Positions 6,012 to 24,458 of a DNA stretch of 64,000 nucleotides are shown here, piece after piece. The DNA is taken from positions 62,001 through 126,000 of the IMG/VR virus record IMGVR_UViG_3300032236_001613; one strand, given 5' to 3'. Below the pieces are notes generated by a model that was given only the letters and a program-made list of their open reading frames with translations, ran no database searches and had not been told where the DNA came from. A program made the position numbers and the translations under genes. Numbering within the stretch: the first letter of the stretch is position 1; each line of letters begins with the position of its first letter.

Positions 6012-6067
6012 TGTCCGTGCTCCTTTTGTTAAGTGTATATTATACAATCAACTAGGTATTGAGTCAA

Positions 6068-6424: not shown

Positions 6425-6471
6425 CTCTATATACCTTTGATGATACAGTATACAGAGATTCTAACCTATTG

Positions 6472-6672: not shown

Positions 6673-6675
6673 TTA

Positions 6676-7305: not shown

Positions 7306-7308
7306 TCT

Positions 7309-8976: not shown

Positions 8977-9029
8977 GGGTCTACTCCTTCTGTTTACATG
9001 CTAACAGTATAGCAGGTTTTACCAAAAAG

Positions 9030-9395: not shown

Positions 9396-9610
9396 CCGAA
9401 TGATCTCCTTGCATCATGTTCGTTGTCAAACATCTTGCAGCCCCAGTAAGTGAGAGCCTGTGCGTTGAAATAGCCAGGCTCACCCTTAGCCTTGTTCCAT
9501 GCTGCACAGGCTTCTGCAAAACTCTCTGCCTCGTACAGTCCACAAAATTCTGCACCGGAAGAATTACCCGTTGCAGCGTAACCTTCCATCCAGACTTCAT
9601 ATTGTTTCAT
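9392..9610 (-). CDS. Hypothetical protein
   Basis: YEVWMEGYAATG..YWGC pattern; overlap coupling. Confidence 0.7.
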   Translation of the reverse strand: MKQYEVWMEGYAATGNSSGAEFCGLYEAESFAEACAAWNKAKGEPGYFNAQALTYWGCKMFDNEHDARRSFG

Positions 9611-9622
9611 TGGTATCTACTT

Positions 9623-9796
9623 TTAAACGTAGCCCAACCACTGAGCTCCCCAACCTAGTGCACCGATTGCACACAATACGCTACCTAGGCCCAACAAAAT
9701 TCTAGCCCAGATGGGCAATATCTTGAATGCAATAGCTTCATAGCCCAAAGACACAAATAAGAACAAATAACAAATAGCTACAATTAACGGTTTCAT
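9623..9796 (-). CDS. Small membrane protein (57 aa)
   Basis: Manual translation MKPLIVAICYLFLFVSLGYEAIAFKILPIWARILLGLGSVLCAIGALGWGAQWLGYV; AGGAG RBS. Confidence 0.7.
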   Translation of the reverse strand: MKPLIVAICYLFLFVSLGYEAIAFKILPIWARILLGLGSVLCAIGALGWGAQWLGYV

Positions 9797-9839
9797 CTTT
9801 CTGCTCCTTTCAATGTAGAAGTATTATAGCAGATCGAGA

Positions 9840-10145
9840 TTAAGAGAACAACCTCTTATACCAGGGCTGTTCATCATTGACAACTTGTGGTTGTGTATTA
9901 AGAGTGGCGGCGTGCAACTCTCTATTTTGATAGCGCAACCCTTGATTCTCACGAGTGATGTCTAACAAATCATCTCGGCAAGATGCTAGGAGAGTTTCAA
10001 GCTCTTGGTTAAGAGCCTTCAAACGTTCGATAATAGTGCGTTGGCTAACGAACATGGCTTCGTAGTCAGCTAAACGCTGCTCTGCAGTAGGCTGTGTCTT
10101 TTCCAGCTCTTCTTTTTTACGCTGTTCGAATGTAGGTGCTGCCAT
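9840..10145 (-). CDS. Coiled-coil protein
   Basis: Heptads; C-terminus PWYKRLFS; AGGAG RBS. Confidence 0.75.
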   Translation of the reverse strand: MAAPTFEQRKKEELEKTQPTAEQRLADYEAMFVSQRTIIERLKALNQELETLLASCRDDLLDITRENQGLRYQNRELHAATLNTQPQVVNDEQPWYKRLFS

Positions 10146-10156
10146 TTCATGCTCCT

Positions 10157-10187
10157 AAAAAAAATGGGCAGTTTAATGACCTGCCCA
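10157..10187 (-). terminator. Rho-independent terminator
   Basis: TGGGCAG/CTGCCCA stem followed by an 8-T run on the minus strand. Confidence 0.8.
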
Positions 10188-10197
10188 GGTCGGTTAA

Positions 10198-10398
10198 TCA
10201 TCCGGCTACAGCATTGTTCCGGACAATCGACTCGGCTTCGTTACCATAAAGCCCATTAGCAGCCTTGATGGAGATCTGCTCACGCAAACCACCCGACTCA
10301 GTGCCGTTGCCCGAAAGCATACGAGCCACTGCATGGATGCTGTGGAAGCGACGGATAACGCCCGACGGATGGGTAACAAAAATTCGACGATTAGTCAT
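10198..10398 (-). CDS. Small putative DNA-binding protein; paralog of 1..132
   Basis: RRFHSIHAVARMLSGNGTESGGLR; AAGGAG RBS. Confidence 0.75.
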   Translation of the reverse strand: MTNRRIFVTHPSGVIRRFHSIHAVARMLSGNGTESGGLREQISIKAANGLYGNEAESIVRNNAVAG

Positions 10399-10477
10399 TT
10401 CAAACTCCTTGTGTATCTAAAAGGTTTAATCTAACTCAACAGAACTATTATAGCAAAACTCTCAATCTAAGTCAACC

Positions 10478-10759
10478 TCAAACCTTAATAACGCCATGGT
10501 TATAACGAGTCTCCAGTACATCGTAAAACTCGTCAACAGCAGCAAAAAACCGGCAATGACGCGGGCTAGCCAAACGTCCTGCAGCCTTAGCACGCCCATA
10601 GGCCCGATTGAAGTTATCGTGCTCGCTACAAATAGCAACCGCATAATCGATACCTTCGGGCTTTTCAATAAAGGCCACAGTGGCTCCACCACGGCTTTCA
10701 ATCTTTCCGTCCAGATCACGGTTACGATAGTGAATGTACTTGATCTTAGGTGTATTCAT
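10478..10759 (-). CDS. Conserved phage protein
   Basis: GGATVA..YAVAICSEHDNFNRAYGRAKA.GRL pattern; RBS and promoter. Confidence 0.75.
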   Translation of the reverse strand: MNTPKIKYIHYRNRDLDGKIESRGGATVAFIEKPEGIDYAVAICSEHDNFNRAYGRAKAAGRLASPRHCRFFAAVDEFYDVLETRYNHGVIKV

Positions 10760-10815
10760 CTGTCCATCTCCTTTCTGTTTGTGTCTAAGTATTATACTAT
10801 GGTTTTACCAAAAGG

Positions 10816-11355
10816 TCAAGTAATTTTTCTCGAAACAATAAAAGTATCATCTGCACAGTTATATAGCAATGATTCCTTAATTTGTTTCGATACGTTAAAA
10901 GTTTTCGGCATCTCGAACTCATCACTTCCTTGATTATTTTTAGCTCGTGCACCCGTATAACGAGTTTGAGATATTATATTCTTTAGATCATATCCTTTAG
11001 ACTTTGCATATTCTTTAATTTGTCGCTTTAACCACCTAATACCGGCGGTTCCTATGTCTACCCCATTATATTGAGTTCCTAAACTAGTATGAACAATTTT
11101 ATTGTTACTGGGATGGTCAACTGGTGCTATATTTCCAATGTCAATGGATCCATTTTTAGAAAGTGAGAATGACGCAATTACCAATGGTCTATTGCTAGAC
11201 TTTTCAATCACTTTGGCATAATAGTGCCCTGGTATATCCTTAACTTGTTCGAAAGTAATAGATAGCTCTTGTTCTGGATTCTTATACGATTCTAGTATCA
11301 ATATTGAATTAATGTTGATAAAAAAGAATTTGCTTTCTATTTCATGTAGTCTCAT
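10816..11355 (-). CDS. AT-rich late-type protein with capsid-targeting-like N-terminus
   Basis: MRLHEIE start; TAAATA box at 11374-11379; AT-rich. Confidence 0.7.
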   Translation of the reverse strand: MRLHEIESKFFFININSILILESYKNPEQELSITFEQVKDIPGHYYAKVIEKSSNRPLVIASFSLSKNGSIDIGNIAPVDHPSNNKIVHTSLGTQYNGVDIGTAGIRWLKRQIKEYAKSKGYDLKNIISQTRYTGARAKNNQGSDEFEMPKTFNVSKQIKESLLYNCADDTFIVSRKIT

Positions 11356-11384
11356 TCCTACGACCTTTTGCTATATTTAACTCC

Positions 11385-12029
11385 TTAGTGTGCATAGTAG
11401 CTAGTGTTCTGTACGCTGTCGTCCCAGCAGGCGCGGCAGTTACCGCACTCATTGTCTTGAAAGCGGCTAGGGCAATCGTAGCCGTGTGCAGCACCATTCT
11501 TATGCACGGTTGAGGTATGCTCAAAGCCCTTAGGCGGCTCTGCGTCCATTTGCTGGGCACTCATACGGATTACAAGATTGCGTGGACGGCTGCGAAGTCG
11601 AAGGAACTCGCGCACCATACCAAACTCACGGGTAGGCAACCAATGCTCAACCCAAGGAGTCTGCTCTGCTACTTCGGCAATCATCTGCAAGTGATCTACA
11701 CTCTGCAGGTCGCCGCTATCGTGCCAACGGAAGTGTGTTTCACCTTTCAGTAGGCGCACCATAGCAGCAATCCAAGTGTCGCGAGTAACAGTATTGAGCA
11801 GAGCTTCTGCCAAACGAGCATGACGACGGTTGTGTGCTGCCTTAGTGTTGGGTAGTGAATACATTCCGCGCATAGCGTAACACTGGTGGCAGGTGCTGCC
11901 TTCTACTTGGCGCAGGATGCTACCAGTTTGGCAACGGGTAGCACTAAGCCCAAAGCTCTTGCCCGGCATTTTGCTAGGATTGCTGAGTCCACCAACAAAC
12001 TCTGCTGCCTCTGCTTTGGTCCTAAACAT
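11385..12029 (-). CDS. Gp88-like phage protein (Cys-rich)
   Basis: LSNPSKMPG.SF.L.A..C..G..L, C..CYA, FRWHDSGDL, HWLPTRE, C..C..CW; start moved to ATG 12029. Confidence 0.75.
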   Translation of the reverse strand: MFRTKAEAAEFVGGLSNPSKMPGKSFGLSATRCQTGSILRQVEGSTCHQCYAMRGMYSLPNTKAAHNRRHARLAEALLNTVTRDTWIAAMVRLLKGETHFRWHDSGDLQSVDHLQMIAEVAEQTPWVEHWLPTREFGMVREFLRLRSRPRNLVIRMSAQQMDAEPPKGFEHTSTVHKNGAAHGYDCPSRFQDNECGNCRACWDDSVQNTSYYAH

Positions 12030-12083
12030 AGCCAACTCCTTACTGTTACTGTAGGAATAGTATACTATGGTTTTACCAAAAGG

Positions 12084-12527
12084 TCAAGCCAATTCTTTCT
12101 TCTTGGCTCGGACTCGGGCTGTTCCCTTCTTAGTATGACGCACCATGCGAGCGTAACGATGCTGCCCCATCAAGATTTGGATACGACCTTCAAACCCGTC
12201 CTTAATAGGAACGCTCCCAGTTTCAATTTTGAAGTTGTTCTTGTCAAACCACTGAAGCCACTCGTAAAGTTCGGCTTCGGCTTCCTCACCGCGGCTCAAT
12301 ACTGCCACGCAGGGATGCTTATGATAGGCGTTCTCCGGACACCAAACGACGCCATTCTTATCTGCTCGTTTGTAGTCCTCGTCGTACCATGCATAGTCTG
12401 GATAATTACCGTCGACTACAATGCCCACGCAATGCCGCCCGATGCCTACTTCGCCTTCGAGATCCAGTTGACAGTTATTCTTAGCAGCCCAAACCGCCAT
12501 CCAAGTAATCTTTTCATCGCGTGTCAT
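12084..12527 (-). CDS. Hypothetical protein
   Basis: Own promoter and AGGAG RBS. Confidence 0.75.
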   Translation of the reverse strand: MTRDEKITWMAVWAAKNNCQLDLEGEVGIGRHCVGIVVDGNYPDYAWYDEDYKRADKNGVVWCPENAYHKHPCVAVLSRGEEAEAELYEWLQWFDKNNFKIETGSVPIKDGFEGRIQILMGQHRYARMVRHTKKGTARVRAKKKELA

Positions 12528-12581
12528 TGTATTACTCCTTGCTCTAACTATGAGTATATTATAACAGGTTTTACCAAATGG

Positions 12582-12923
12582 TCAAACACAATCTGAGACA
12601 AATTCTGTGTCAGGTGCAACCAGCGTTTCTACAAACCAAGTACCGCCTGTGCCCTGAGTATGCTCTTGTGCGTAGTCTTCTGCAGACTCTACGCTAGGAA
12701 ACGGGCCCGCAAAGTTAAATCCCTTGACAGGATCTCCATGTACTACAACAAGATCCACATTATCATCTTGTCCATCAACATTGGGCGTCCGCATCATGAC
12801 TACAAACCATGCAGCGGCTGTGCAGTACTCCCCGCCATAGTCGTAGGCTGCTTCTTCTTGATCAAAAGGCCCGATAAACTCGAAGCCGCTAGAAAGGTCA
12901 CCAAATAATATAACAAACTGCAT
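12582..12923 (-). CDS. Protein with internal duplication
   Basis: Two copies of V...GD...GF.F.GPF...E.A.DY..E...  WFV. Confidence 0.8.
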   Translation of the reverse strand: MQFVILFGDLSSGFEFIGPFDQEEAAYDYGGEYCTAAAWFVVMMRTPNVDGQDDNVDLVVVHGDPVKGFNFAGPFPSVESAEDYAQEHTQGTGGTWFVETLVAPDTEFVSDCV

Positions 12924-12987
12924 AGACAGTCTCCTTTTGCTATGAGTATATTATAACAGGTTTTACCAAAAAGTCAAGACCTGTGTT

Positions 12988-13353
12988 CTAAAGAGTCAAA
13001 CCTTCGACACCATTTTTCCGAGGTTGCCAGATACACTGGCTCCACTGAACTAGTTCTCGGTCATTCCTGTCATCGTAGGGTTCTAACCATGCCACAGGCA
13101 CCGCGTAAGACATAGGCCTGCCACTATGAGTGGAAGTTCCCCGATCAATCTGCCTACCGTCGGCCAGCACAGCAGTGAGGTCGTGCACGTCACAGGTGAT
13201 GCGTTGCCCGCCTGTTGTCTCTACAGTGGCGTGCCTGGCAGGTGCTCGCACCACAGCGTATTGCAGTTCATCGGGCGGTGGCGTGCCCTGCTGGTCAATC
13301 TGAATCACACGGACCCGTTGTCCAACTTTAAATCCCGTACTCATATTAAACAT
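12988..13353 (-). CDS. Hypothetical protein (FKVGQRV / WSQCIWQP)
   Basis: Own promoter and RBS; motifs shared with 2459..3001. Confidence 0.7.
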   Translation of the reverse strand: MFNMSTGFKVGQRVRVIQIDQQGTPPPDELQYAVVRAPARHATVETTGGQRITCDVHDLTAVLADGRQIDRGTSTHSGRPMSYAVPVAWLEPYDDRNDRELVQWSQCIWQPRKNGVEGLTL

Positions 13354-13405
13354 TTTCTCCTTGCTAGTGTCTGTGTATTATAGCAGGTTTTACCAAGAAG
13401 TCAAG

Positions 13406-13640
13406 TGCTTCTCTCTGCTGGCGGTGTTTGTCATCTCACCACAAACAATTATGTGGTATCCGCATCCCAACACAGAGAGACTTTCGTGTGCCAACGCCCG
13501 TTAGGTTAGACGGCAGTATTGCTACTGGAGACCATTGACAGTCATTCTCGCGAATGATATGTTGTTCTCAAACCACCCGTGGTTGTCACACCACTTCATC
13601 ATGCGGGTCACATTAGTGGCTGACTAAGCCACGTGGTCTT
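13406..13640 (-). ncRNA. Candidate multi-hairpin structured ncRNA
   Basis: ORF-free; GNRA-capped stems TCATTC-GCGA-GAATGA and CAGTA-GCAA-TACTG; 8-bp TCTCTCTG/CAGAGAGA enclosing a 7-bp stem. Confidence 0.6.
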
Positions 13641-13643
13641 TAA

Positions 13644-13928
13644 TTAACTAAAAATGTCAGCCAAAATCTGGTCAATTTCATGCTGACGTGCACGTTCGCC
13701 ATGAACGCGATCCATGAACTCTGACATCATGCCCGGACGATTGTGGACATAGTCCAGCTGGCCGTATGCCGAAATGTCAAAGTAACGGAAGGATGGTGCA
13801 CCAGGATAGTACTTAATCCACTGACCGCGCTGCAGGACCAAACGACCGTCCTGGATAGCACGCCGAGTGGCCGGATCCGAAAGAACCGGAGTAGGAAGAA
13901 ACTGACGACCCTTACGATTGATAACCAT
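13644..13928 (-). CDS. Hypothetical protein
   Basis: Promoter 13978-14006 and AAGGAG RBS. Confidence 0.7.
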   Translation of the reverse strand: MVINRKGRQFLPTPVLSDPATRRAIQDGRLVLQRGQWIKYYPGAPSFRYFDISAYGQLDYVHNRPGMMSEFMDRVHGERARQHEIDQILADIFS

Positions 13929-14002
13929 ATTAATTGCTCCTTACAAAAAAGTGTTTAAACTCTAACTCAACAGAACTATTATACTAAACTTTTACCAAAA
14001 GG

Positions 14003-14164
14003 TCAATAAAGACTTGAAAGATTTTCACGTTGCCAAACCCAGAGATCCTGTATCACATGAAACGCAGGTCCAACAGGGCCAATAGCGACGCCAGTGCGGC
14101 TATCCACTTCAAAAGTCTGCCAACCGCCTACAACACTACGGCAAGTGTATTCTTTGACAAACAT
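14003..14164 (-). CDS. Small hypothetical protein (53 aa)
   Basis: Manual translation MFVKEYTCRSVVGGWQTFEVDSRTG...; AAGGAG RBS. Confidence 0.65.
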   Translation of the reverse strand: MFVKEYTCRSVVGGWQTFEVDSRTGVAIGPVGPAFHVIQDLWVWQRENLSSLY

Positions 14165-14173
14165 GTCTGCTCC

Positions 14174-14326
14174 TTAGAGTTTGATCAGCACATCAGGATA
14201 GGCAGTAGCAAATGTTCGTGTTCGTTCACCACGCGGATCATAGTAATAATCCACTCGTTGACAATAGCGTTTGGCCAGCCACTTCACCACGAACACAGGC
14301 AGTATCACAGTCCATTTTGCTAACAT
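14174..14326 (-). CDS. Small hypothetical protein (50 aa)
   Basis: Manual translation MLAKWTVILPVFVVKWLAKRYC...; AAGGAG RBS, promoter 14353-14380. Confidence 0.65.
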   Translation of the reverse strand: MLAKWTVILPVFVVKWLAKRYCQRVDYYYDPRGERTRTFATAYPDVLIKL

Positions 14327-14376
14327 TGTTTGCTCCTTACTAGTATCTATATAGTATAGCAGGTTTTACCAAAAGG

Positions 14377-14595
14377 TCAACCAACCAAACCCTCATCCAT
14401 CATCTCCAAGAGTTTGATGGTGTATTCTCGCTCGTGACTGTAAGTCCTTGACTCGTTAGCCCATTCCTCACCATAGACAGCGAGGAACTCGTTGTAGATC
14501 TCTCGAAGAGAGATTTGAGGAAAACGGAATGCAACCTCATGGTACAGTTGGCCTTGGTTGACCATCTCGCGCATCTCGATGTTGATCTCTTTCAT
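14377..14595 (-). CDS. Hypothetical protein
   Basis: Own promoter 14620-14647. Confidence 0.7.
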   Translation of the reverse strand: MKEINIEMREMVNQGQLYHEVAFRFPQISLREIYNEFLAVYGEEWANESRTYSHEREYTIKLLEMMDEGLVG

Positions 14596-14649
14596 CTTAC
14601 CCTCGTTTGCTATGAATATATTATAGCAGGTTTTACCAAAAGGTCAAAC

Positions 14650-14844
14650 TTAGAATTGGCGAACGCAGAGTGACTGAATATGCGGAGCAGGCGCATAAAA
14701 ACTATTTTGTTCCTGCTGATGCAGCCATCCAGTACCTGCAGCTAGACAGGCCTCTTTGCTTTCAAAAGGCCCAATCTGGGTTATAGCTGAGCCGCCGCGA
14801 TGGTCACTCGCCGCAATAGTAAGAATCAATAACCAACCTGCCAT
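14650..14844 (-). CDS. Small exported/membrane protein
   Basis: WLLIL..., F.SKEAC..A pattern; GGAG RBS. Confidence 0.7.
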   Translation of the reverse strand: MAGWLLILTIAASDHRGGSAITQIGPFESKEACLAAGTGWLHQQEQNSFYAPAPHIQSLCVRQF

Positions 14845-14845
14845 A

Positions 14846-15046
14846 TTATTTCTCCTTCTTCAATTTAGGAAAGTGATAGGCTAAATTTTCCCAGAGACCT
14901 AGAACTATTGCTGCGGGTATAAACAGCACCATTAGACGGCTCCTGTCTAGGCCTAGCCCTAGTAATGGCATAGTCGTTAGTATCACAATACCTGCTATGA
15001 TCAGAGCCACAACTACGCTCAGTAAAATGACCAATAGAGTCACCAT
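14846..15046 (-). CDS. Small two-TM membrane protein
   Basis: Hydrophobic; 1-nt spacing with neighbours. Confidence 0.7.
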   Translation of the reverse strand: MVTLLVILLSVVVALIIAGIVILTTMPLLGLGLDRSRLMVLFIPAAIVLGLWENLAYHFPKLKKEK

Positions 15047-15047
15047 A

Positions 15048-15251
15048 TTACTTGTCCTTCTTGAAAAGATCCACTACAGACATCAAAATGCTCTTCAGTA
15101 AGAACACTACAAAGCCTACAACCGCGTATGGCAGACAGATGATAAAGCCTATAACAGGCACAGCCATCACAGCAGCTCCTAATGAGAACACGGCAGCGAA
15201 TGCTACTATGCACCATAAAATCAACAGAGTTGAGTAACTAACGGTAATCAT
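15048..15251 (-). CDS. Small two-TM membrane protein
   Basis: Hydrophobic; 1-nt spacing. Confidence 0.7.
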   Translation of the reverse strand: MITVSYSTLLILWCIVAFAAVFSLGAAVMAVPVIGFIICLPYAVVGFVVFLLKSILMSVVDLFKKDK

Positions 15252-15252
15252 A

Positions 15253-15471
15253 TCACTTGACCTTTTTTGGAAAAATCTTTTTCCAAAGCATAATGGGTGA
15301 TGTGATCAGTAACACGCCCAGCATCAATATACCACCCGGAATTAGAATAATCCACAGTATGGGCCTCTGCTTGGTGCCGAAATGTGCGCCAAACTTCATA
15401 GAAACCATGCCGGCTATTCCCAATGCCAAAAACAATACAACCAGCAAGGTTATGAGACTGATAGTAATCAT
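15253..15471 (-). CDS. Small two-TM membrane protein
   Basis: Hydrophobic; AAGGAG RBS. Confidence 0.7.
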   Translation of the reverse strand: MITISLITLLVVLFLALGIAGMVSMKFGAHFGTKQRPILWIILIPGGILMLGVLLITSPIMLWKKIFPKKVK

Positions 15472-15480
15472 AACATCTCC

Positions 15481-15774
15481 TTAAAACGGAATATCGTCGT
15501 CAAGCTGACGAGTAGATGGCCGAGGAGGACCTACGAACTCACTCTTAGCAACAGCCCGATCAACCCAGTATTGTACCTCCTCTTCGGTCATATAACAGGT
15601 TTCTTCAGGATGTGGCTGCGGCTTACCACGATAGTGCGGGTTCTCAATCCACACGTCGTAATCAGTAAGAATCCATTGACTATCCTTGTAACGATCATAA
15701 TCACCTACATTGTAGGCATATTCACGCATGGCTTCAGCTGGAGTGGCTACGCGATCTTCTTCATCATAAAACAT
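15481..15774 (-). CDS. Protein ending in SSB-tail-like DDDIPF
   Basis: C-terminus LDDDIPF; own promoter and RBS. Confidence 0.8.
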   Translation of the reverse strand: MFYDEEDRVATPAEAMREYAYNVGDYDRYKDSQWILTDYDVWIENPHYRGKPQPHPEETCYMTEEEVQYWVDRAVAKSEFVGPPRPSTRQLDDDIPF

Positions 15775-15828
15775 TGAAGACTCCTTACTGTTACTGTAGG
15801 AATAGTATACTACGGTTTTACCAAAAGG

Positions 15829-16095
15829 TCAAGATTTTTTGTATAGAGAGTGAAGGGCTTCGTGCTGCTCCAAAGCTTTCAACTGCTTCTTCACCTGAGT
15901 GAGATAGAGGTAGCGGCGATTGACTTCGGATCGGGCCAACTCACCATCGCAGGTCAAGTTCTCAGGGCTAAGGTCAGACTCTAGATGACCTGCCAGATGC
16001 CGACGGTGTTGCGGATCGTTGAGGTCCAGATCGGCCTCCTTGAAGAAGCGATTGATCTGATTGATGTGATCTAGATATTCAGTGAGTTCTTCCAT
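15829..16095 (-). CDS. Conserved phage protein
   Basis: LSPENLTCDGEL motif; own promoter and RBS. Confidence 0.75.
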   Translation of the reverse strand: MEELTEYLDHINQINRFFKEADLDLNDPQHRRHLAGHLESDLSPENLTCDGELARSEVNRRYLYLTQVKKQLKALEQHEALHSLYKKS

Positions 16096-16152
16096 AGGTT
16101 GCTCCTTGCTAGTGAGTCAGTATTATACTAAGGTTTTACCAAAAGGTCAACA

Positions 16153-16359
16153 TCAATTCACAAGATTTACACGCTCTAAACGGTAAAAGAAATCTTGCTT
16201 AGGGTCAACAATTCCAAACTCCACAAAGTATTCCGAACCTGTAAGTTCGTCATGGCAATGGAACCCGTCATCTTGTGTGTAGTCAATACGAAACACATCA
16301 CCATTCTGTATAAAGAATACTGAGTTCTGTGCAATGTCATGCAATTCGTTATGGTCCAT
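16153..16359 (-). CDS. Hypothetical protein
   Basis: Stop/start overlap. Confidence 0.7.
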   Translation of the reverse strand: MDHNELHDIAQNSVFFIQNGDVFRIDYTQDDGFHCHDELTGSEYFVEFGIVDPKQDFFYRLERVNLVN

Positions 16360-16691
16360 TATGCCTTCTCCTCAGTTTGAGCTTTGAGCTTGGCTAACTT
16401 TTTTTCGAGATTACTGATTTCTTTCAAGCGGGCCTTTTCCTTTCGGATAGCCTCTTTCTTCTTTTCTTCCTCTTCTCGAATTTTACGTTCAGCATCCTGC
16501 TTCTGATGTTCATTCCACCAGTCCAGATGCTGTTTCTTAGTAACTCCGCACTCTGTCCAATCAATGCGATCCACAATAGTAGGATCTGCTCGCATAGCAG
16601 CACAAACTACGGCTTCGAACTGTTTGACACGTTTCTCAAGGTTTCGTGAATTACGTTCTCGATCATAACTATCATCTACATAGCAAGGCAT
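16359..16691 (-). CDS. Hypothetical protein with charged coiled coil
   Basis: MPC start, WW.EH..QD motif; AAGGAG RBS. Confidence 0.75.
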   Translation of the reverse strand: MPCYVDDSYDRERNSRNLEKRVKQFEAVVCAAMRADPTIVDRIDWTECGVTKKQHLDWWNEHQKQDAERKIREEEEKKKEAIRKEKARLKEISNLEKKLAKLKAQTEEKA

Positions 16692-16703
16692 ATCATATTC
16701 TCC

Positions 16704-17057
16704 TTAGTCTGAACTGTCGTAGGCGTTGATCTGACCGCAATGGATACACTTATACTGGTCATAGCCGCGGCCTAGATTCTGTAAGAACTTCCACTCATGC
16801 CCAGAACACTTAGCCGCAGTCTCCTTAGAGACATAACCGTGACCACCACAGTGATCACAGATTTTACGGAAATGACTGTAACGATGACGATTCTCTGGAG
16901 TATCAGGCTTGCCATGCAGGTTGTAGCTGTTGATAGAAAGATTCCACCCACCATGACCACGGCAGCGAGGACACTCTACAGTATAATTAAGCCAAGGCTC
17001 CTTGCGTGGATGATCCAAGAATGCATCTGGATGATCTGGCGTAAGAAAGTCTGACAT
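16704..17057 (-). CDS. Zinc-finger protein (DnaJ-type CxxCxGxG)
   Basis: CPRCRGHG, CDHCGGHG, CIHCG. Confidence 0.8.
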   Translation of the reverse strand: MSDFLTPDHPDAFLDHPRKEPWLNYTVECPRCRGHGGWNLSINSYNLHGKPDTPENRHRYSHFRKICDHCGGHGYVSKETAAKCSGHEWKFLQNLGRGYDQYKCIHCGQINAYDSSD

Positions 17058-17110
17058 ATGTTACTCCTTGCTCTAACTATGAAACTATTATAGCAGGTTT
17101 TACCAAAAGG

Positions 17111-17257
17111 TCAACCGTTATCTGGAACTTCCTTGAAGCCAAATGCCGTAAGGTCATCAAGGTTAATGACTTCCCGGAGATAGTTCAGTAGCATCAGCTC
17201 GGCTGCATCGAGATCTTCTGCATCAAACTCTGTTTCGAAATTGATTTTGAATTTCAT
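17111..17257 (-). CDS. Small acidic protein (48 aa)
   Basis: Manual translation MKFKINFETEFDAEDLDAAELMLLNYLREVINLDDL...; stop lies in the next -35 box. Confidence 0.55.
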   Translation of the reverse strand: MKFKINFETEFDAEDLDAAELMLLNYLREVINLDDLTAFGFKEVPDNG

Positions 17258-17462
17258 AGGCTTCCTCACGGCTCATTTCATTATTGATACGATTGAAAAT
17301 GCAGTAGTCAGACACTCCTGCATCATACCCGGTCTTATAAGCATGACCACATTTGGCGTCGTGCCCGTTAACGGCATCGTAATACTGCTGATCTACACGA
17401 CCTTCTTCACGCCCGTCGAAGTAACCACGAGCATAGGCATAATAGGTGCTATCGTAAGACAT
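17223..17462 (-). CDS. Hypothetical protein
   Basis: YARGYFDGR..YKTGYDAG repeat-like motif; AAGGAG RBS. Confidence 0.7.
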   Translation of the reverse strand: MSYDSTYYAYARGYFDGREEGRVDQQYYDAVNGHDAKCGHAYKTGYDAGVSDYCIFNRINNEMSREEAYEIQNQFRNRV

Positions 17463-17480
17463 TGTGTTGCTCCTTTAATC

Positions 17481-17690
17481 TTATACCAATTTCATATAGT
17501 TAAATTCGGTCTTATTGCAGCGGCTGCAGATTCTGGTTTGATATATCACAAAACTGTAGACTCGACCCTTTCTATGCCAGGTTTCATTAAGAGACATGTT
17601 TGTCTCTTCATGATCCTCTCCATTGAGAAACTCACGAACGTAGTATTCGTTTAGATTAGCCCACTGACTCCACTTGTGTATAATGCACAT
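17481..17690 (-). CDS. Hypothetical protein
   Basis: MCIIHKWSQW..RICSRCNK pattern. Confidence 0.65.
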   Translation of the reverse strand: MCIIHKWSQWANLNEYYVREFLNGEDHEETNMSLNETWHRKGRVYSFVIYQTRICSRCNKTEFNYMKLV

Positions 17691-17747
17691 ATTACTTCAG
17701 CTCCTTGCTCTAACTGTGAATACATTATAGCAGGTTTTACCAAAAAG

Positions 17748-17990
17748 TCAACCTTCTTCGTCTTCTTCCTCGTCGTCTTCGGGCCAATCGTCGTCCTCAT
17801 CGTCTTCCCATTCTCCGTTACAATCTTCTCCCCAGGGTTCGTCGATGACGAGATCTAGGTTCTCGTCAAAAACTTCTTGGTTGACAATGGATACGTTGAC
17901 ATGGTTGTGTTCATAGTTTGCCAAAGCTTCAACATCAGTTTCTGCTTCAACTTCATACTGATGGGTGATTCGAACGTAGAATTTGGGCAT
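17748..17990 (-). CDS. Acidic hypothetical protein
   Basis: Own promoter and RBS; poly-D/E tail. Confidence 0.75.
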   Translation of the reverse strand: MPKFYVRITHQYEVEAETDVEALANYEHNHVNVSIVNQEVFDENLDLVIDEPWGEDCNGEWEDDEDDDWPEDDEEEDEEG

Positions 17991-18041
17991 CTCAATCTCC
18001 TTGTTATTGAAATAGAATTATACTAAGGTTTTACCAAAAGG

Positions 18042-18227
18042 TCAACCAGCTGGCGTTATATTCACAACAGTGAATAGTCCTCCCGGATAGGCTTCGAGAG
18101 CAACTGAAGGAAATAAATCAACGGCAGCATTTAGATCCGCTGCTTCAATCGTTAGACTTTCTAGTCTCCCAGGGTGAGGGAACTCAGGAGGATCTGATAC
18201 TTGAAAAGTTATAGTCCATAGACTCAT
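18042..18227 (-). CDS. Hypothetical protein
   Basis: GGAG RBS, overlap. Confidence 0.6.
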   Translation of the reverse strand: MSLWTITFQVSDPPEFPHPGRLESLTIEAADLNAAVDLFPSVALEAYPGGLFTVVNITPAG

Positions 18228-18460
18228 ATTACTACTCCATGTTCTTTATTGGATAGAATTACTTTTAATGCAATAGAATACGCTTCTTCAGCATCTTCAC
18301 AATTAAACAATTCAGGAAAACTACCCCGATCTAGATAGACATTGCAGATGTACTGGCCAAACCGCCAGTCCCGCTCATCACGACCACGACGATAGTGTGC
18401 GATCCAATAACGGCGCTCGAGGTTCAATAGGTGAACGGTAAGTGTGCGAGAAAACTGCAT
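18224..18460 (-). CDS. Hypothetical protein
   Basis: R.GQ...N.Y.....PELF..ED pattern. Confidence 0.65.
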   Translation of the reverse strand: MQFSRTLTVHLLNLERRYWIAHYRRGRDERDWRFGQYICNVYLDRGSFPELFNCEDAEEAYSIALKVILSNKEHGVVI

Positions 18461-18521
18461 AGATAATATTTACCATGTTTATCAGCCAATATTATAGCAG
18501 CTACTGCCAAACGATCAATAT

Positions 18522-18899
18522 TTACTTACTAGATGTCTGGACGAAGTGAGCTTGAGACCTATAGCCTAGTTCGCGTAGGCTAGTATTAATCAACTGCATG
18601 ACCGTCTTAGAAACGGGCGTGTCTGTTCTTGGAGGTTGAATACTCCAGGGCATTCCTCGCTCTTTGGGTTTCAAAAATGGATATCGATACTTCTCACCAT
18701 TAGGGTAACGAAACTCTTGCCCAGTTTTTTTGAGCAAGGTATTGTAAAGCCAATAAAGCATGTTGCTACGCTGACGTGCACGATCGTAGATATCTTTAGA
18801 AGATTGATCAATCTGTTCGATACCCCGACGCAAGGCACTGAGAGCTAATGCTTGAAGCTCGGGGTCTGGGTTACTTTCTAACAGTTCTTGTATCTGCAT
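18522..18899 (-). CDS. Late protein with capsid-targeting-like N-terminus
   Basis: MQIQELLE; TAAATA 4 nt upstream of ATG. Confidence 0.75.
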   Translation of the reverse strand: MQIQELLESNPDPELQALALSALRRGIEQIDQSSKDIYDRARQRSNMLYWLYNTLLKKTGQEFRYPNGEKYRYPFLKPKERGMPWSIQPPRTDTPVSKTVMQLINTSLRELGYRSQAHFVQTSSK

Positions 18900-18919
18900 A
18901 CTGTATTTATTTGTAGAAA

Positions 18920-19225
18920 GTTGCAGCGTCTTCGCTGGGTACGAAACGCTGCTGCCTCTTGATTTTTTGGAGATAAATCCTTCCAGCCCCGCTGAATCGG
19001 GCTCAAGTTATCCTACTTGTGCGACAAACAATAGAAACTTTCGTTTCTACCCGGCAAAGCCCTCATCATAACGACAATGACTCTACCCGCGGTTATACCG
19101 TTTCATTAGTCCCCTAGGAGCATAGCTAGCATTCAGACCGCTAGACGACACTAAGGGTTTCGCTTTCGGTTCAGGCATATGTAGTTATCAACATCACAGA
19201 CCGCTACAGCGGGGTTTTTGGTTTA
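18920..19225 (-). ncRNA. Candidate ~300-nt structured ncRNA downstream of tRNA-Leu
   Basis: ORF-free; long-range CCCCGCTG/CAGCGGGG, TAGAAAC-GAAA-GTTTCTA hairpin, GCAGCGT/ACGCTGC stem. Confidence 0.55.
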
Positions 19226-19230
19226 ATAGT

Positions 19231-19519
19231 TGGTGCCCTGAGCCGGACTCGAACCGGCACGCCAGTGGCGTCAGATTTTCTTACTACTACAGTTTTCACT
19301 GCCAGCTTGCGCTGTTTGTAGTCTGGACTATACCTTGACCTTAGCTATTGCTTTAGGTCCTTGCCGTCTAGTCTCTACACCTTCCTATTTCTAGGCTTGG
19401 CTCGGTATTAGCAGTTAAGCCTTCACCGAATTTGACAAGTTACATCTTAAAAGTTTCCTAATAAGAGCTCAAATCTTTTCTCTAAGTCTGATGCGTCTAC
19501 CTTGTTCCGCCATCAGGGC
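19231..19519 (-). tRNA. tRNA-Leu(UAA) split by a group I intron (exons 19484-19519 and 19231-19279)
   Basis: Acceptor GCCCTGA/TCAGGGC, anticodon stem TCAGA/TCTGA, loop CT-T^AA-AA after splicing, long variable arm, CCA. Confidence 0.92.
19280..19483 (-). mobile_element. Group I self-splicing intron (IC3-type, 204 nt, no ORF)
   Basis: P AAATTCGGTGAA, Q AATACCGAGC, R GTAGAGACTAGACGG, S AAGGTATAGTCC; follows a U and ends in G; inserted after U34. Confidence 0.9.
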
Positions 19520-19572
19520 AAATTATCAACTAACTATCTATTTAATATACGCTAATTATCTTCAGTTGTCAA

Positions 19573-19715
19573 ATGAGTTTTAGCCTCAGTTTACTATTCT
19601 CTTGCTACCTGATGTAAGTGCTTACAACACTTTTTACTAGTATCACAGGCTACCCGCTTCGAACAAGGTTAGGCTTGTACTTGTACTTGACCCGACGAGC
19701 TGGGCTAAAACTCAT
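19573..19715 (-). ncRNA. Candidate 143-nt rod-shaped ncRNA with its own promoter
   Basis: Perfect 13-bp terminal inverted repeat ATGAGTTTTAGCC; predicted +1 lies 7 nt after TATAAT of TTGACC-17-TATAAT. Confidence 0.6.
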
Positions 19716-19771
19716 AAAACTATTATATGCTAGCACCAGCATAAGGTCAACAATTAACAATAAATACTCCT

Positions 19772-20947
19772 ATGCGCATCCAAGAGCTACTATTAGAATA
19801 CAACCGACAGATTACCCTACAAAAGATAGGCGATCAGCTGACTCAAACAGCAGCTAGAGAACACACTACTGCAGAAGAGGCTATAGCTGCACTGGAAGAA
19901 ATGGATCCAACCGCAAATAAACAGTATACTCCTTGGCTGGCACGACAATACATTAAGCAGCAGTTTAGATTAGAGGACGCAGATAGAATACGCACAGTAC
20001 TAGATAACTTTGGTCAACTTAAATCAAGACTACCTGTTGAACAAAGAGATATAGGACGTATGGATTTTTACCAACTTGATGATTTAATTAATCAAGTATT
20101 AGATGTTAAACTAGAGGTGGATAAGCCTATTGAAGGAGGTACTTTCCCTATAGTTCCTGACTCCCGAGTCTTATACAACGGACCATTAGGGCAATTAGCT
20201 ATACCAGAAACCCGAGAAGCCAGTTGCGAATTAGGTCGTGGTACTGAATGGTGTACGGCTTATACAAAATCAAATAATCAATTTGATAGTTATAATCGAA
20301 GAGGTCCTTTATACGTATGGCGAGACAAAAATGGTGAGAAATATCAATTCCATTTCAGCGGCGGCCTACAAATGATGGATAGTCGAGATCGCCCTATAGA
20401 AAAAGATAAAATAGATTATTTTAGAAAACAGCATCCTGTACTTAAAAAATTGTTTCGACAAATAGAATCTCAAGCGTTAAAAGACCCTATATTAGCAACT
20501 CAGTATGCCGAAAAAGTAATTGGAGGACGTTGGCCCGAAGGCGAGGCCACAATAGCACAAACCTCACAGGCAGCATATTACTACGCTCGAAAAATAATCA
20601 AAAGTCGGTTTCCTGAGGGGGAAGCAGCATTATTAGAACCATCAACTGACATTAATTTTCTAATTTTTTATGCCGAACAAGTAATCAAAGGTCGTTGGCC
20701 TGAAGCTGAAGAAATGATAGCACAAAACCCATCGGCAGCATTTTACTACGCCCGACACATAATCAAAGGTCCTTTTCCTGAGGGGGAAGACGCAATAGCT
20801 CAAGATGACAGGCTCGCTTACAACTATGCTGTAGAAATACTTAAAGATCGTTTCCTAAAAGGAGAAAAGACTCTACAAAAGAGCAATGTTTATTGGTACC
20901 ATTACAAAAAACATTTCGGAATAAAACAACGTAAAGGTAAAACCTAA
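19772..20947 (+). CDS. Putative internal head protein with C-terminal helical repeats; paralog of 23127..24458
   Basis: MRIQELLLE; DPT..K.YT.WL, WCTA..N.F..Y..GP.Y, GEKYQFHF; ~6 repeats of A..YA..IIK.RWPEGE..I. Confidence 0.85.
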   Translation: MRIQELLLEYNRQITLQKIGDQLTQTAAREHTTAEEAIAALEEMDPTANKQYTPWLARQYIKQQFRLEDADRIRTVLDNFGQLKSRLPVEQRDIGRMDFYQLDDLINQVLDVKLEVDKPIEGGTFPIVPDSRVLYNGPLGQLAIPETREASCELGRGTEWCTAYTKSNNQFDSYNRRGPLYVWRDKNGEKYQFHFSGGLQMMDSRDRPIEKDKIDYFRKQHPVLKKLFRQIESQALKDPILATQYAEKVIGGRWPEGEATIAQTSQAAYYYARKIIKSRFPEGEAALLEPSTDINFLIFYAEQVIKGRWPEAEEMIAQNPSAAFYYARHIIKGPFPEGEDAIAQDDRLAYNYAVEILKDRFLKGEKTLQKSNVYWYHYKKHFGIKQRKGKT

Positions 20948-22467: not shown

Positions 22468-23130
22468 ATGCGTGCACAAGAAGTATTTGAATCTTATAGA
22501 TGGAGCTGGTCAGACGATGATGCAGAACAGCTCTCTAGTAAGATCCCACCCAAATATCTAGAAAGATTACGTAATCTCACTGTCCGGGATCGACGAGTTA
22601 GCAACTTTATGGATACCCATAACATTAACTTGGTTCAATTTCTCACAAGATTTCAGGAACAAAAGGGTTTAGATCCAGTAAACAAAACTGAGTTAGCATC
22701 TGATTTTATTGTTAAGATTCCGAAAAATAATCCTGAAGGTTTTTATTTTGCAAATAAATCTAATGAAGTTAGAGCCGGTGCCGAATTAGATATTGCAGAT
22801 CAAGCACATACAGATCTATATCGCGTTTATATGAAGACCAAACTTCGCGCAGAAAAGATAAACACTCCATTTACATTAACATTAAAAGAAGCCGCCGACA
22901 TCTTTAAAGCACAGGGAGGCAAATGTGCATTAACTGGAGAAAAGTTAGGAAAAGGACTAGGATCATCACCCAGTATGGATCAACGAGTTCCTAGAGTGAG
23001 AGGCGGCCCTGGTTATACTAAAGACAATGTACAATGGGTTACCGCACAGATTAACTTTGCTAAACAGAATTTAACTAATGAAGAATTTGCAGATCTTTGT
23101 AAAAAAGTTGCTGCACATTCCGGGAATTAG
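22468..23130 (+). CDS. HNH-like (bba-Me) endonuclease domain protein
   Basis: QGGKCALTG..SPSMDQ..GYTKDNVQWV..IN.AK; N-terminus MRAQEVFE. Confidence 0.7.
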   Translation: MRAQEVFESYRWSWSDDDAEQLSSKIPPKYLERLRNLTVRDRRVSNFMDTHNINLVQFLTRFQEQKGLDPVNKTELASDFIVKIPKNNPEGFYFANKSNEVRAGAELDIADQAHTDLYRVYMKTKLRAEKINTPFTLTLKEAADIFKAQGGKCALTGEKLGKGLGSSPSMDQRVPRVRGGPGYTKDNVQWVTAQINFAKQNLTNEEFADLCKKVAAHSGN

Positions 23131-24458
23131 AGTCTGTACCATTTGTCCTTTAACTTTACTAAAAACCTCGATACAGTTTGATACGCATAATGGCCATCAT
23201 ACTCTGTAGGCCCCGATTCCATGTCCCGAATAAGTTCGTTCACAGTATCTTTGAATTGCCTACGATATGTTAAGTCTGCTTGATCTGCGTTGCCTAAGGT
23301 CTTGATTTCATGCTTTCCTGGACCATCCGTGGGTAGATAATAGCGATCAGCTACAACTACTACAGCAGAAAAATCAGGTGGAAATATGGCATATACAAGT
23401 TGGGATGCTTTTTGTCCACGACTGGGTGCAACTCTGAGTGTTTGTAAAAAAGAACCCATATGTACATTAAAAAGTTCTTCAAAAGGATCAACCAACTCCC
23501 ATTCAAACATACCACTTTCTACTAGAATGCAAGAGTACATGCCATTTTCTAATTGACGAGCTTTCCATTTAAGATATTGTTTTGTATGGTTTAATCCATT
23601 ATAAGATGGCTTACGTGGTGGCTTTAACCAACTTAAACGATATTCTTTAGCTTGGTCTGCAAAGATTTTTGATAGCTCAGGAAACCTTCTAACTAGACTG
23701 CTGCCCCACTCACTAATGTCATTATCATGTTCGTCCATAAACTGGTGGCTAGGAAAATGAAACTGGTATTTTTCCCCAGTATGTACAGGCTGTCTAGGTA
23801 TTATAATATACATAGGACCATCTTGGTTATAGCTGTTAAACATGTTGTTGTTTGTAGCAGCTGTACACCAACGAGTGTTCTGCCCATAAAAGCAAGCTGC
23901 TTCTCGATCATTTGGTTTTATAACAATTAGACGATCATCACGAAATACTTCATCGTAATCGCCGCGGGGTGACTTCTGCTTTTGGTCATCTCTACGACTT
24001 CTGACTGCAGAAAAAGCGTTATATAACGTTCTAAAATTATAAGCGTTAATATCTCTAAGATTAGTTAATCTGCGACGTTTGTAGTCATCAAATTTTTCTA
24101 GAGAATCTGTAATCTCAGTAGCTACATCTTCTGCATGCATCGCGTCCTTACAATAGTTTTTTATTAACCATTGAGTGTATTCTTTATGTGGGGTGGGATC
24201 CATTAATTCAAAAATATTTACTAAGATTTTTTTAGACTCAGCTTCGATTGCATGGCGAGGATTATCATAGTCGTTGTGTTCGTCATAGGCCATACATAAA
24301 ATACTGTACCCTCTTTCACTAAGTAGGTCAGCAGATTTTAGACGTTGTATGTGATTATAACTTTCCAATTCAAAGAAATGTTTATACAACTTATCACCAT
24401 AATTCTTAACGGTGATTTCATGATTATATTCGACAAGGAACAGTTCGTTGAGTAACAT
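23127..24458 (-). CDS. Putative internal head protein; paralog of 19772..20947
   Basis: MLLNELFLVE; DPTPHKEYTQWL, WCTAATNNNMFNSYNQDGPMY, GEKYQFHF. Confidence 0.85.
   Translation of the reverse strand: MLLNELFLVEYNHEITVKNYGDKLYKHFFELESYNHIQRLKSADLLSERGYSILCMAYDEHNDYDNPRHAIEAESKKILVNIFELMDPTPHKEYTQWLIKNYCKDAMHAEDVATEITDSLEKFDDYKRRRLTNLRDINAYNFRTLYNAFSAVRSRRDDQKQKSPRGDYDEVFRDDRLIVIKPNDREAACFYGQNTRWCTAATNNNMFNSYNQDGPMYIIIPRQPVHTGEKYQFHFPSHQFMDEHDNDISEWGSSLVRRFPELSKIFADQAKEYRLSWLKPPRKPSYNGLNHTKQYLKWKARQLENGMYSCILVESGMFEWELVDPFEELFNVHMGSFLQTLRVAPSRGQKASQLVYAIFPPDFSAVVVVADRYYLPTDGPGKHEIKTLGNADQADLTYRRQFKDTVNELIRDMESGPTEYDGHYAYQTVSRFLVKLKDKWYRL

What the first reader, a model, noticed from the sequence alone, without database searches (positions are those of the whole stretch)
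18920..19225. ~300-nt structured RNA co-transcribed behind tRNA-Leu
Seen: begins a few nt after the tRNA CCA. An 8-bp long-range helix (19207-19214/18987-18994) closes a ~230-nt multibranch domain containing a GAAA-capped 7-bp hairpin (19032-19049) and a TAGCGGTCTG direct repeat; a final hairpin lies at 18923-18952. Known: large phage ncRNAs such as GOLLD are often adjacent to tRNAs. Inference: a new tRNA-linked ncRNA whose 5' end is released by tRNA processing.
Basis: partly seen in the sequence, partly recalled or inferred. Interest (0 to 1): 0.65.

Follow-up and report, generated by a model that had tools for sequence, protein, structure and literature searches.

The report
New structured RNA behind phage tRNA-Leu
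A freshwater jumbo phage encodes a roughly 310-nt RNA directly behind an intron-containing tRNA-Leu gene; its fold has been kept by compensating mutations, it matches no described RNA family, and its function is unknown.

Summary
The window is part of a 328-kb jumbo-phage record. On the minus strand a sigma-70-like promoter (19572-19544) is followed by tRNA-Leu(UAA) carrying a 204-nt group I intron (19519-19231). Next come the ~310-nt non-coding stretch (19230-18917) and a 125-aa orphan gene (18899-18522).

I recovered five sequence types of this stretch (66-94% identical) from lake metagenomes. They share about 80 base pairs in 12 helices, 18 of them with compensatory double changes. 96% of cells pair on the minus strand, against 78% on the plus strand and about 40% when partners are slid. 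The stretch changes far more slowly than third-codon positions next door, has no conserved ORF, and has no Rfam hit in any homologue.

It is therefore a real, new, narrowly distributed structured RNA on the tRNA strand. Co-transcription and 5' release by tRNA processing are inferred only; no RNA-seq run holds this phage.

Two readings remain. It may be a stable RNA cut out of the tRNA transcript, like the phage T4 tRNA-cluster RNAs or GOLLD/ROOL (about 0.45). Or it may be a structured cis-acting leader of the downstream gene (about 0.35).

The locus is a homing-endonuclease hot spot. In relatives the intron is present or absent, the tRNA block is inverted, an ORF is inserted into the RNA, or the whole module is replaced.

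The parts
19544..19572 (-). Sigma-70-like promoter (TTGACA-17-TATATT, 11/12) about 25 nt upstream of the tRNA 5' end
   Evidence: The equivalent site in relative L118 is TTGACA-17-TAATAT with an upstream TG.
19231..19519 (-). tRNA-Leu(UAA) with encoded CCA, interrupted in the anticodon loop by a 204-nt group I intron (about 19280-19483)
   Evidence: ARAGORN -i; Rfam RF00028, 64.3 bits; intron-less alleles in L127/L128, L112 and L118 and in run X3.
19214..19230 (-). A/U-rich unpaired spacer between CCA and the first helix (17 nt here, 28 nt in intron-less relatives); the likely tRNA 3'-trailer cleavage zone
   Evidence: Sequence and alignment. Cleavage there is inferred.
18983..19221 (-). Core domain: a multi-helix junction closed by the long-range helix P1 (19213-19207 with 18994-18988), which is extended by 19221-19219/18985-18983 and 19203-19201/19000-18998
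   Evidence: RNAalifold on 4 and on 5 sequences; helix coordinates.
19159..19200 (-). Conserved, mostly unpaired junction strand containing GAUAAC and CCUGAACCGAAAGCGAA. This is the site of the 552-nt ORF insertion in relatives L123/124/126.
   Evidence: Alignments.
19110..19158 (-). Long hairpin (19158-19151/19117-19110 plus 19146-19140/19126-19120) with the invariant loop motif GUCUGAA. This is the helix richest in covariation: 10 of its 14 pairs show double changes.
19090..19100 (-). Small conserved hairpin CGGU-AUA-ACCG inside the block CUAAUGRAACGGURUARCCGC
19053..19087 (-). Variable hairpin (19087-19079/19061-19053 plus 19075-19073/19067-19065), shortened by 15 nt in the L112 type
19030..19051 (-). 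9-bp hairpin capped by GAAA in the window. The stem covaries; the loop is not conserved.
19001..19022 (-). Hairpin CAAGU-AGGAUA-ACUUG, stacked on GC/GC pairs next to P1
18917..18980 (-). 3' part: a small covarying hairpin (18980-18978/18971-18969), an A-rich linker, and a nearly invariant 15-pair hairpin (18958-18942/18934-18917). No U-tract follows the hairpin.
   Evidence: The terminator scan lists nothing here.
18522..18916 (-). AU-rich start region (ACAAAUAAAUA, no Shine-Dalgarno) and the 125-aa orphan gene P0001 (18899-18522), followed at once by the next early promoter (18518-18491)

Best explanation
The stretch encodes a single-copy structured RNA of about 310 nt on the window's minus strand. 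It is probably made as part of one early transcript: promoter, then tRNA-Leu(UAA) with its self-splicing intron, then this RNA, then gene P0001.

Host tRNA 3'-end processing in the A/U-rich spacer after CCA would free its 5' end. The very stable, conserved 3' hairpin would protect its 3' end after a cut in the AU-rich stretch before the start codon. The product would be a stable, independently folded RNA: a junction of five hairpin arms closed by P1, plus a 3' hairpin. It would act as an RNA, for example as a protein- or RNA-binding scaffold or decoy, rather than as a spacer.

Shown here: the conserved fold, the strand, purifying selection, the absence of coding potential, and modular inheritance with the tRNA. 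Inferred: the transcript, the processing and the action in trans. The molecular target is unknown. The confidence given (0.45) is for this whole mechanism; that the structured RNA itself is real I hold at about 0.85.
For: - Fold: five sequence types share 80 pairs, 18 of them with compensatory changes. On four types, 95.3% of cells pair against 35-45% with partners slid, and 0 of 500 shuffles reach the observed covariation.
- Strand: 75 G-U cells against 4 A-C cells. 95.9% of cells pair on the minus strand against 77.9% on the plus strand.
- Selection: RNA identity is 0.66-0.94, against 0.50-0.82 at third-codon positions of the adjacent gene.
- Non-coding: every frame has 2 or more stops in every type; the indels are not multiples of three, and the one AUG-led frame in the junction strand stops after two codons in L109.
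- Transcription: a promoter-like site lies upstream of the tRNA. The scan lists no promoter-like or terminator-like site between the tRNA and the RNA or inside the RNA.
- Link to the tRNA rather than to the gene: P0001 homologues without the tRNA also lack the RNA; homology starts about 13 nt before the AUG (L107/108, L110/111). L109 and L112 have near-identical P0001 genes but divergent RNAs, so RNA and gene recombine separately.
- Single-sequence folds of the homologues recover the local helices. In L127 the tRNA cloverleaf and the RNA helices fold side by side.
- Precedent: ROOL and GOLLD are often near tRNA islands in phages and prophages, and one GOLLD lies downstream of a Met-tRNA (bioRxiv 10.1101/2024.12.08.627333).
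Against: - No RNA data: no RNA run holds the phage, so neither a stable product nor its ends are shown.
- The RNA is always followed by P0001. This is biased, because nearly all homologues were retrieved through P0001.
- No terminator separates the RNA from the ORF, so on the primary transcript it is a 5' leader.
- In L120-122 the RNA has no same-strand tRNA in front of it. In L123/124/126 a 178-aa ORF is inserted into it. These lineages occur in many samples, so either the tRNA link or the RNA itself is dispensable.
- There are only five sequence types from one narrow phage lineage, so the statistical power is limited. P1 itself never covaries.
- One homologue (L112) has an unremarkable folding z-score of -0.6.
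Confidence: 0.45

Rival explanations
1. It is a cis-acting leader of the P0001 mRNA. The P1-closed domain would be a sensor (for a ligand, a protein or a tRNA), and the conserved 3' hairpin with the AU-rich start region would be its expression platform, setting translation or stability of P0001.
For: - On the predicted transcript the RNA lies between the tRNA and P0001 with no terminator or promoter between.
- A junction closed by P1, followed by a linker and a strong hairpin about 20 nt before the AUG, is the usual riboswitch layout.
- P0001 lacks the AAGGAG ribosome-binding site that the other early genes have.
- When the HNH-tRNA block is inverted (L120-122), the RNA stays with P0001.
- In RNA-less relatives a 12-bp hairpin sequesters the P0001 start codon, so this start is regulated by RNA structure elsewhere.
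Against: - P0001 homologues function without the RNA behind other genes (L107/108, L110/111).
- RNA and P0001 have separate recombination histories.
- No U-tract follows the hairpin, and there is no Shine-Dalgarno to sequester.
- No alternative pairing is supported by covariation.
- A P1-enclosed domain of about 226 nt is large for an aptamer.
Confidence: 0.35
2. It is a self-processing or catalytic RNA, a new ribozyme class, that separates the tRNA from the downstream mRNA or acts on the tRNA.
For: The size, the multi-helix junction and the long invariant unpaired blocks (CCUGAACCGAAAG, GUCUGAA, AACGGURUARCCGC) are typical of RNAs with a defined tertiary fold. The phage already carries a group I ribozyme 1 nt-spacer away.
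Against: No known ribozyme family matches, even at E up to 10, in five homologues. No conserved pseudoknot was found between unpaired blocks. Nothing here tests catalysis.
Confidence: 0.08
3. It is a passenger: a spacer or decaying remnant carried along with the tRNA cassette in a recombination hot spot, or an element that works at the DNA level (a homing or recombination target). The apparent structure would come from shared ancestry.
For: There are only five related sequences. The locus is full of homing-endonuclease genes and rearrangements. One widespread lineage tolerates an ORF inserted into the RNA. Complete relatives defined by terminase similarity lack it.
Against: 18 compensatory pairs, with slid and shuffled controls far lower. 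The strong G-U over A-C asymmetry is expected only for selection on one RNA strand. Substitution is far slower than at synonymous-like sites next door.
Confidence: 0.1

Closest known systems
GOLLD and ROOL large ornate RNAs of phages and prophages
   Same: Both are phage-encoded and often near tRNA islands, and one GOLLD lies directly downstream of a tRNA (bioRxiv 10.1101/2024.12.08.627333). Both are elaborate multi-helix folds with no known protein partner or function.
   Different: No Rfam match for either family in five homologues. This RNA is about 310 nt, against about 580 nt (ROOL, from my own knowledge) and more than 800 nt (GOLLD). No self-complementary loops pointing to multimer formation were seen. 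The distribution is limited to one phage lineage.
Phage T4 stable RNAs 'species 1 and 2' (rnaC, rnaD) in the tRNA gene cluster
   Same: They are small stable RNAs of unknown function, encoded among phage tRNA genes, co-transcribed with them and released by tRNA-processing enzymes. The T4 tRNA region also holds a homing endonuclease gene, segB (PMC2330249), much like the endonuclease hot spot here.
   Different: No sequence relation was tested or is expected. The T4 RNAs are shorter. Here the RNA follows a single intron-bearing tRNA-Leu far from the phage's main 26-tRNA array, and it precedes a protein gene on the same transcript.
Riboswitch-type 5' leaders, including T-box leaders
   Same: A junction closed by P1, followed by a linker and a strong hairpin just upstream of an ORF. 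The element also sits physically next to a tRNA.
   Different: No Rfam riboswitch or T-box match. There is no terminator U-tract and no Shine-Dalgarno to mask. The downstream gene is an orphan rather than a metabolic or aminoacyl-tRNA synthetase gene, and it exists without the leader in relatives.
Group I intron of tRNA-Leu(UAA), the neighbouring element
   Same: A structured RNA of similar size on the same transcript. In relatives an ORF is inserted into an unpaired region of the new RNA, as ORFs are in introns.
   Different: The Intron_gpI model matches only 19308-19493, not the new RNA. No allele joins the flanks as exons. Relatives that lack the RNA have unrelated genes upstream.

Membership tests
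GOLLD / ROOL (Rfam families) | Match to the family covariance model | tested here: not met
   cmscan against all 4227 Rfam 15 families, at E up to 10 with permissive filters, on the window region and on four homologous loci. Nothing overlaps the RNA.
GOLLD / ROOL (Rfam families) | Phage or prophage location near tRNA genes | tested here: met
   328-kb virus record. The RNA starts 1 nt after the CCA of tRNA-Leu.
GOLLD / ROOL (Rfam families) | Length of about 580 nt (ROOL) or more than 800 nt (GOLLD) | tested here: not met
   About 310 nt between the tRNA and the start codon in all five types.
Group I intron | Match to Intron_gpI, and flanking exons that are joined in intron-less alleles | tested here: not met
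   The model hits only the tRNA intron. RNA-less relatives share homology only on the 3' side, from about 18912.
T-box / known riboswitch classes | Match to the family model; terminator or ribosome-binding-site-sequestering platform | tested here: not met
   No Rfam hit. There is no U-tract after the 3' hairpin and no Shine-Dalgarno.
tmRNA, RNase P RNA, 6S and other housekeeping RNAs | Detection by ARAGORN or Rfam | tested here: not met
tRNA-cluster stable RNAs of the phage T4 type (a functional kind, not a sequence family) | Co-transcribed with tRNA and released as a discrete stable RNA by tRNA-processing nucleases | not testable with these tools
   No RNA run holds the phage. Only promoter position, strand and spacer composition support it.
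Structured non-coding RNA (generic) | Conserved secondary structure with compensatory changes on one strand, and no coding potential | tested here: met

The most novel reading that the evidence does not exclude
This is a new class of large functional phage RNA that is physically coupled to tRNA-Leu. It could be a ribozyme, or an RNA-only or RNP assembly that acts on or shields the phage tRNA-Leu (for example against host tRNA-targeting defences). Alternatively it could be a new riboswitch class that controls an early gene.
Probability: 0.15. Interest if true: 0.75.

Novelty: new variant of a known kind. Interest (0 to 1): 0.45.

Why it matters
tRNA-linked structured RNAs of phages (the T4 stable RNAs, GOLLD, ROOL) have had no known function for years. 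A compact example of about 310 nt with a clear domain layout is a tractable object for probing, cryo-EM and ligand or protein pull-downs. Natural variants also exist: with and without the tRNA intron, with the tRNA block inverted, with an ORF inserted, or with the whole module replaced.

The locus also shows a jumbo phage carrying the classic trnL(UAA) group I intron as a presence/absence polymorphism. It sits in a hot spot of homing endonucleases, which is useful for studying how tRNA modules move between phages.

The limits are the narrow distribution, the unknown host and the lack of expression data.

Tried and rejected
- Rfam at gathering and at E up to 10, on the window and on four homologous loci: nothing on the RNA.
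- blastn against 50,697 phage records: only the tRNA and intron part matches, in huge uncultured phages and in Agrobacterium phage Atu_ph07.
- Neighbour protein P0002 in IMG/VR: 8 loci, none with the tRNA or the RNA.
- Terminase relatives: 377 in IMG/VR. BLAST over 20 records and covariance model R1 over 50 records, including two complete genomes of 322 and 353 kb, found no copy. P0001 and P0002 are also absent from the five largest.
- Paralogues in the phage's own genome: none by BLAST, covariance model or motif search.
- Exact-pattern scans:
  - Viral contigs, four scans: nothing.
  - Metagenome contigs: one truncated copy identical to L113 (L114).
  - Genome contigs: nothing, then one match (L133, a Gemmatimonas-labelled MAG contig) with no other similarity, so a chance hit. 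My estimate is about 0.5 such hits expected by chance.
- Exhaustive profile search with P0001: only its own 50% cluster, so no distant relatives to extend the alignment. Atlas look-up for P0001: no lead.
- RNA-seq: none of the 20 listed holder runs is on record as RNA. Laying contigs gave structural variants but no expression data.
- Conserved pseudoknots between unpaired blocks (5 or more pairs in all sequences): none.
- Coding reading: rejected.
- Plus-strand reading: rejected.
Only the 5' 140 nt were modelled.

Full report
**Where the window lies.** The window is bases 62001-126000 of a 328,068-bp IMG/VR virus record that CheckV rates 92% complete. The record has 28 tRNA genes, a terminase and tail-fibre-like proteins, so it is a jumbo phage. 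All DNA runs that hold it are lake or freshwater metagenomes.

**The observation.**
- Minus-strand layout:
  - a sigma-70-like promoter at 19572-19544 (TTGACA-17-TATATT, 11 of 12);
  - tRNA-Leu(UAA) at 19519-19231 with an encoded CCA;
  - about 330 nt without a conserved ORF;
  - a 125-aa gene, P0001, at 18899-18522, followed at once by the next early promoter (18518-18491).
- Plain ARAGORN misses the tRNA because a 204-nt group I intron splits its anticodon loop. ARAGORN with introns finds it, as does Rfam Intron_gpI at 64 bits.
- The minus-strand fold has an MFE of -99.7 kcal/mol, z = -2.7, with 0 of 100 shuffles as stable. The plus strand gives z = -2.0.

**Finding relatives.**
- Neither nucleotide search of phage records nor IMG/VR relatives found through the neighbour gene P0002 held the region. 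The same was true of relatives found through the terminase, two of them complete genomes.
- The word search with P0001 found five clusters at 75-85% identity. The exhaustive search showed these are the whole family.
- Their contigs and cluster members gave five distinct sequence types of the region: the window, L127/128, L113 (with L114), L109/L117, and L112/L118-122.
- One type (protein P0011) is listed in 56 blocks of the collection, on contigs up to 328 kb. The lineage is therefore common in lakes, although narrow.

**Conserved structure.**
- The alignment alternates invariant blocks with variable stretches that hold 1-, 3-, 5- and 15-nt indels.
- RNAalifold on five sequences predicts 80 pairs, 18 with at least one compensatory double change.
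- On four sequences the structure pairs 95.3% of cells, against 35-45% when the 3' partners are slid by 1-3 columns. It has 17 pairs with double changes, against 1-7 in the slid controls. None of 500 column shuffles reaches the observed covariation score.
- The layout in window coordinates is:
  - P1, 19213-19207 with 18994-18988, with two short extensions, closing a junction;
  - a conserved unpaired strand of about 40 nt (GAUAAC, CCUGAACCGAAAGCGAA);
  - a long hairpin at 19158-19110 with the invariant loop GUCUGAA, in which 10 of 14 pairs show double changes;
  - a small hairpin at 19100-19090;
  - a variable hairpin at 19087-19053, shortened in one type;
  - the hairpin at 19051-19030, capped by GAAA only in some types;
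  - the hairpin at 19022-19001;
  - outside P1, a small covarying hairpin, an A-rich linker and a nearly invariant 15-pair hairpin at 18958-18917.
- P1 itself never covaries; it shows only one G-U change.

**Strand, selection and coding.**
- The structure contains 75 G-U cells and only 4 A-C cells. 95.9% of cells pair on the minus strand and 77.9% on the plus strand. The selected molecule is therefore the minus-strand RNA, the same strand as the tRNA and P0001.
- Pairwise identity of the RNA is 0.66-0.94, against 0.50-0.82 at third-codon positions of P0001 in the same genomes. This is close to the identity of codon positions 1 and 2.
- All six frames carry stops in all types, and the indels are not multiples of three.
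- The motifs are unique in the 328-kb genome.
- No Rfam 15 family touches the RNA in any of the five homologues, even at E up to 10.

**Context in relatives**.
1. tRNA-Leu with intron, then RNA, then P0001: the window, L113 and L117.
2. Intron-less tRNA-Leu, then RNA, then P0001: L112, L118/119 and L127/128. A contig of run X3 differs from the window at 11 of 672 positions and has 87 nt in place of the 298 nt that hold nearly all of the tRNA with its intron.
3. L120-122: the HNH-endonuclease-plus-tRNA-Leu(intron) block is inverted. The RNA, 99.9% identical to L118, is preceded by an antisense tRNA fragment and only a weak promoter-like site.
4. L123/124/126: a 552-nt insert carrying a 178-aa ORF sits in the unpaired junction strand, 51 nt into the RNA, with a short duplicated AAAUAC.
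5. L107/108 and L110/111: no tRNA and no RNA. A T5orf172-type gene lies directly upstream of P0001, homology to the window begins about 13 nt before the AUG, and a 12-bp hairpin sequesters the start codon.
6. A contig of run X6 replaces 18475-19534 (P0001, RNA and tRNA) with 2081 other bases. The exchange lies between the two promoter regions.

The genes occupying this site in relatives are HNH, T5orf172/GIY-YIG-like and other homing-endonuclease-like proteins.

**Mechanism.**
- Shown: a conserved fold on the tRNA strand that is under purifying selection and non-coding.
- Inferred: transcription from the promoter upstream of the tRNA. The scan lists no promoter-like or terminator-like site between the tRNA and the RNA or inside the RNA. 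Also inferred are release of the 5' end by cleavage of the A/U-rich tRNA trailer and a 3' end protected by the conserved hairpin.
- For a stable RNA tied to the tRNA:
  - the RNA is absent wherever the tRNA module is absent, although P0001 is present;
  - L109 and L112 have nearly the same P0001 gene (0.92 and 0.82 identity) but divergent RNAs (0.73), so RNA and gene are separate recombination modules;
  - there is precedent in tRNA-linked phage RNAs.
- For a cis-acting leader:
  - there is no terminator before P0001;
  - the layout is riboswitch-like;
  - P0001 lacks the AAGGAG site of the other early genes;
  - the RNA stays with P0001 when the tRNA block is inverted.
- I put about 0.45 on the stable tRNA-linked RNA, 0.35 on the leader, about 0.08 on a ribozyme and about 0.1 on a passenger or DNA-level element. 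That the structured RNA itself is real I hold at about 0.85.

**Comparison with known families.**
- It behaves like the tRNA-adjacent phage RNAs GOLLD and ROOL in its context. By my own recollection it also resembles the T4 tRNA-cluster stable RNAs. The T4 tRNA region likewise holds a homing endonuclease, SegB (PMC2330249).
- It is not a member of GOLLD, ROOL, group I introns, T-box leaders or any other Rfam family; the model matches were tested and not met.
- It is best called a new family within the known kind 'phage tRNA-linked structured RNAs of unknown function'.

**Limits.**
- There are five sequence types from one lineage, and the host is unknown.
- Expression is untested, because no RNA run holds the phage and only Logan contigs could be laid.
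- The covariance model covered only the 5' 140 nt.
- Retrieval through P0001 biases the apparent RNA-P0001 linkage.

Noticed in passing
window 19280-19483 (minus strand), and L127/L128, L112, L118, run X3: The phage tRNA-Leu(UAA) carries a 204-nt group I intron in the anticodon loop. The intron is a presence/absence polymorphism among close relatives: L127 is 89% identical and lacks exactly the intron. A contig of run X3 differs from the window at 11 of 672 positions and has 87 nt in place of the 298 nt that hold nearly all of the tRNA with its intron. Weakly similar intron sequences occur in huge uncultured phages and in Agrobacterium phage Atu_ph07.
   Followed up: partly
window 2400-18520, minus strand (e.g. 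18045-18016, 17751-17722, 17114-17085, 16150-16121): At least 15 copies of a near-identical early promoter cassette, TTGACCTTTTGGTAAAACCTGCTATAAT, each followed by an AAGGAG ribosome-binding site and a small ORF. The conserved spacer suggests an extra recognition element. In a relative, module exchange occurs between the promoter regions that flank the cassette (run X6).
   Followed up: partly
L107/L108, L110/L111, L113, L120-L123 (the site equivalent to window 18900-19770): The site upstream of P0001 is a hot spot for homing-endonuclease-like genes (T5orf172, HNH_3, a phrog_314 homing endonuclease). It also shows rearrangements: an inverted HNH-tRNA block and a 552-nt ORF insertion into the RNA.
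   Followed up: partly
L107:795-860 and L110:2440-2505 (the equivalent of window 18890-18940): In relatives that lack the RNA, a 12-bp inverted repeat (AUCUGCAUCCUG ... CAGGAUGCAGAU) encloses the AAAUAAAUA motif and buries the P0001 start codon. Part of that arm (CUGCA) resembles the 3' arm of the window's 3' hairpin.
   Followed up: no
G000:C1:26682-29258 (outside the window; L010:244-2820): The large terminase is 858 aa, whereas most relatives match over only about 529 aa. The extra N-terminal part hits the LAGLIDADG_3 domain (above Pfam's cut-off) and, weakly and below the cut-off, the Hint domain. It is therefore likely an intein with a homing endonuclease.
   Followed up: partly
window 19772-20947 (P0002), repeats at 20504-20632 and 20669-20797: The 391-aa protein upstream, on the other strand, contains tandem internal repeats with the motif (G/S)R(W/F)PEGE. 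It shares phrog_28193 and phrog_17056 with the 443-aa protein at 23127-24458. Its function is unknown.
   Followed up: no
G000:C1:194408-203999 (outside the window): The main array of 25 tRNA genes lies about 113 kb from the intron-bearing tRNA-Leu. It has several gaps of 0.5-2 kb between tRNAs that were not examined for further RNAs.
   Followed up: no
P0021 (1722 aa, metagenomic): The only other hit of P0001 in 1.8 billion representatives is a weak match (E = 9e-5). P0001 residues 78-123 match a 1722-aa protein in four stretches.
   Followed up: no
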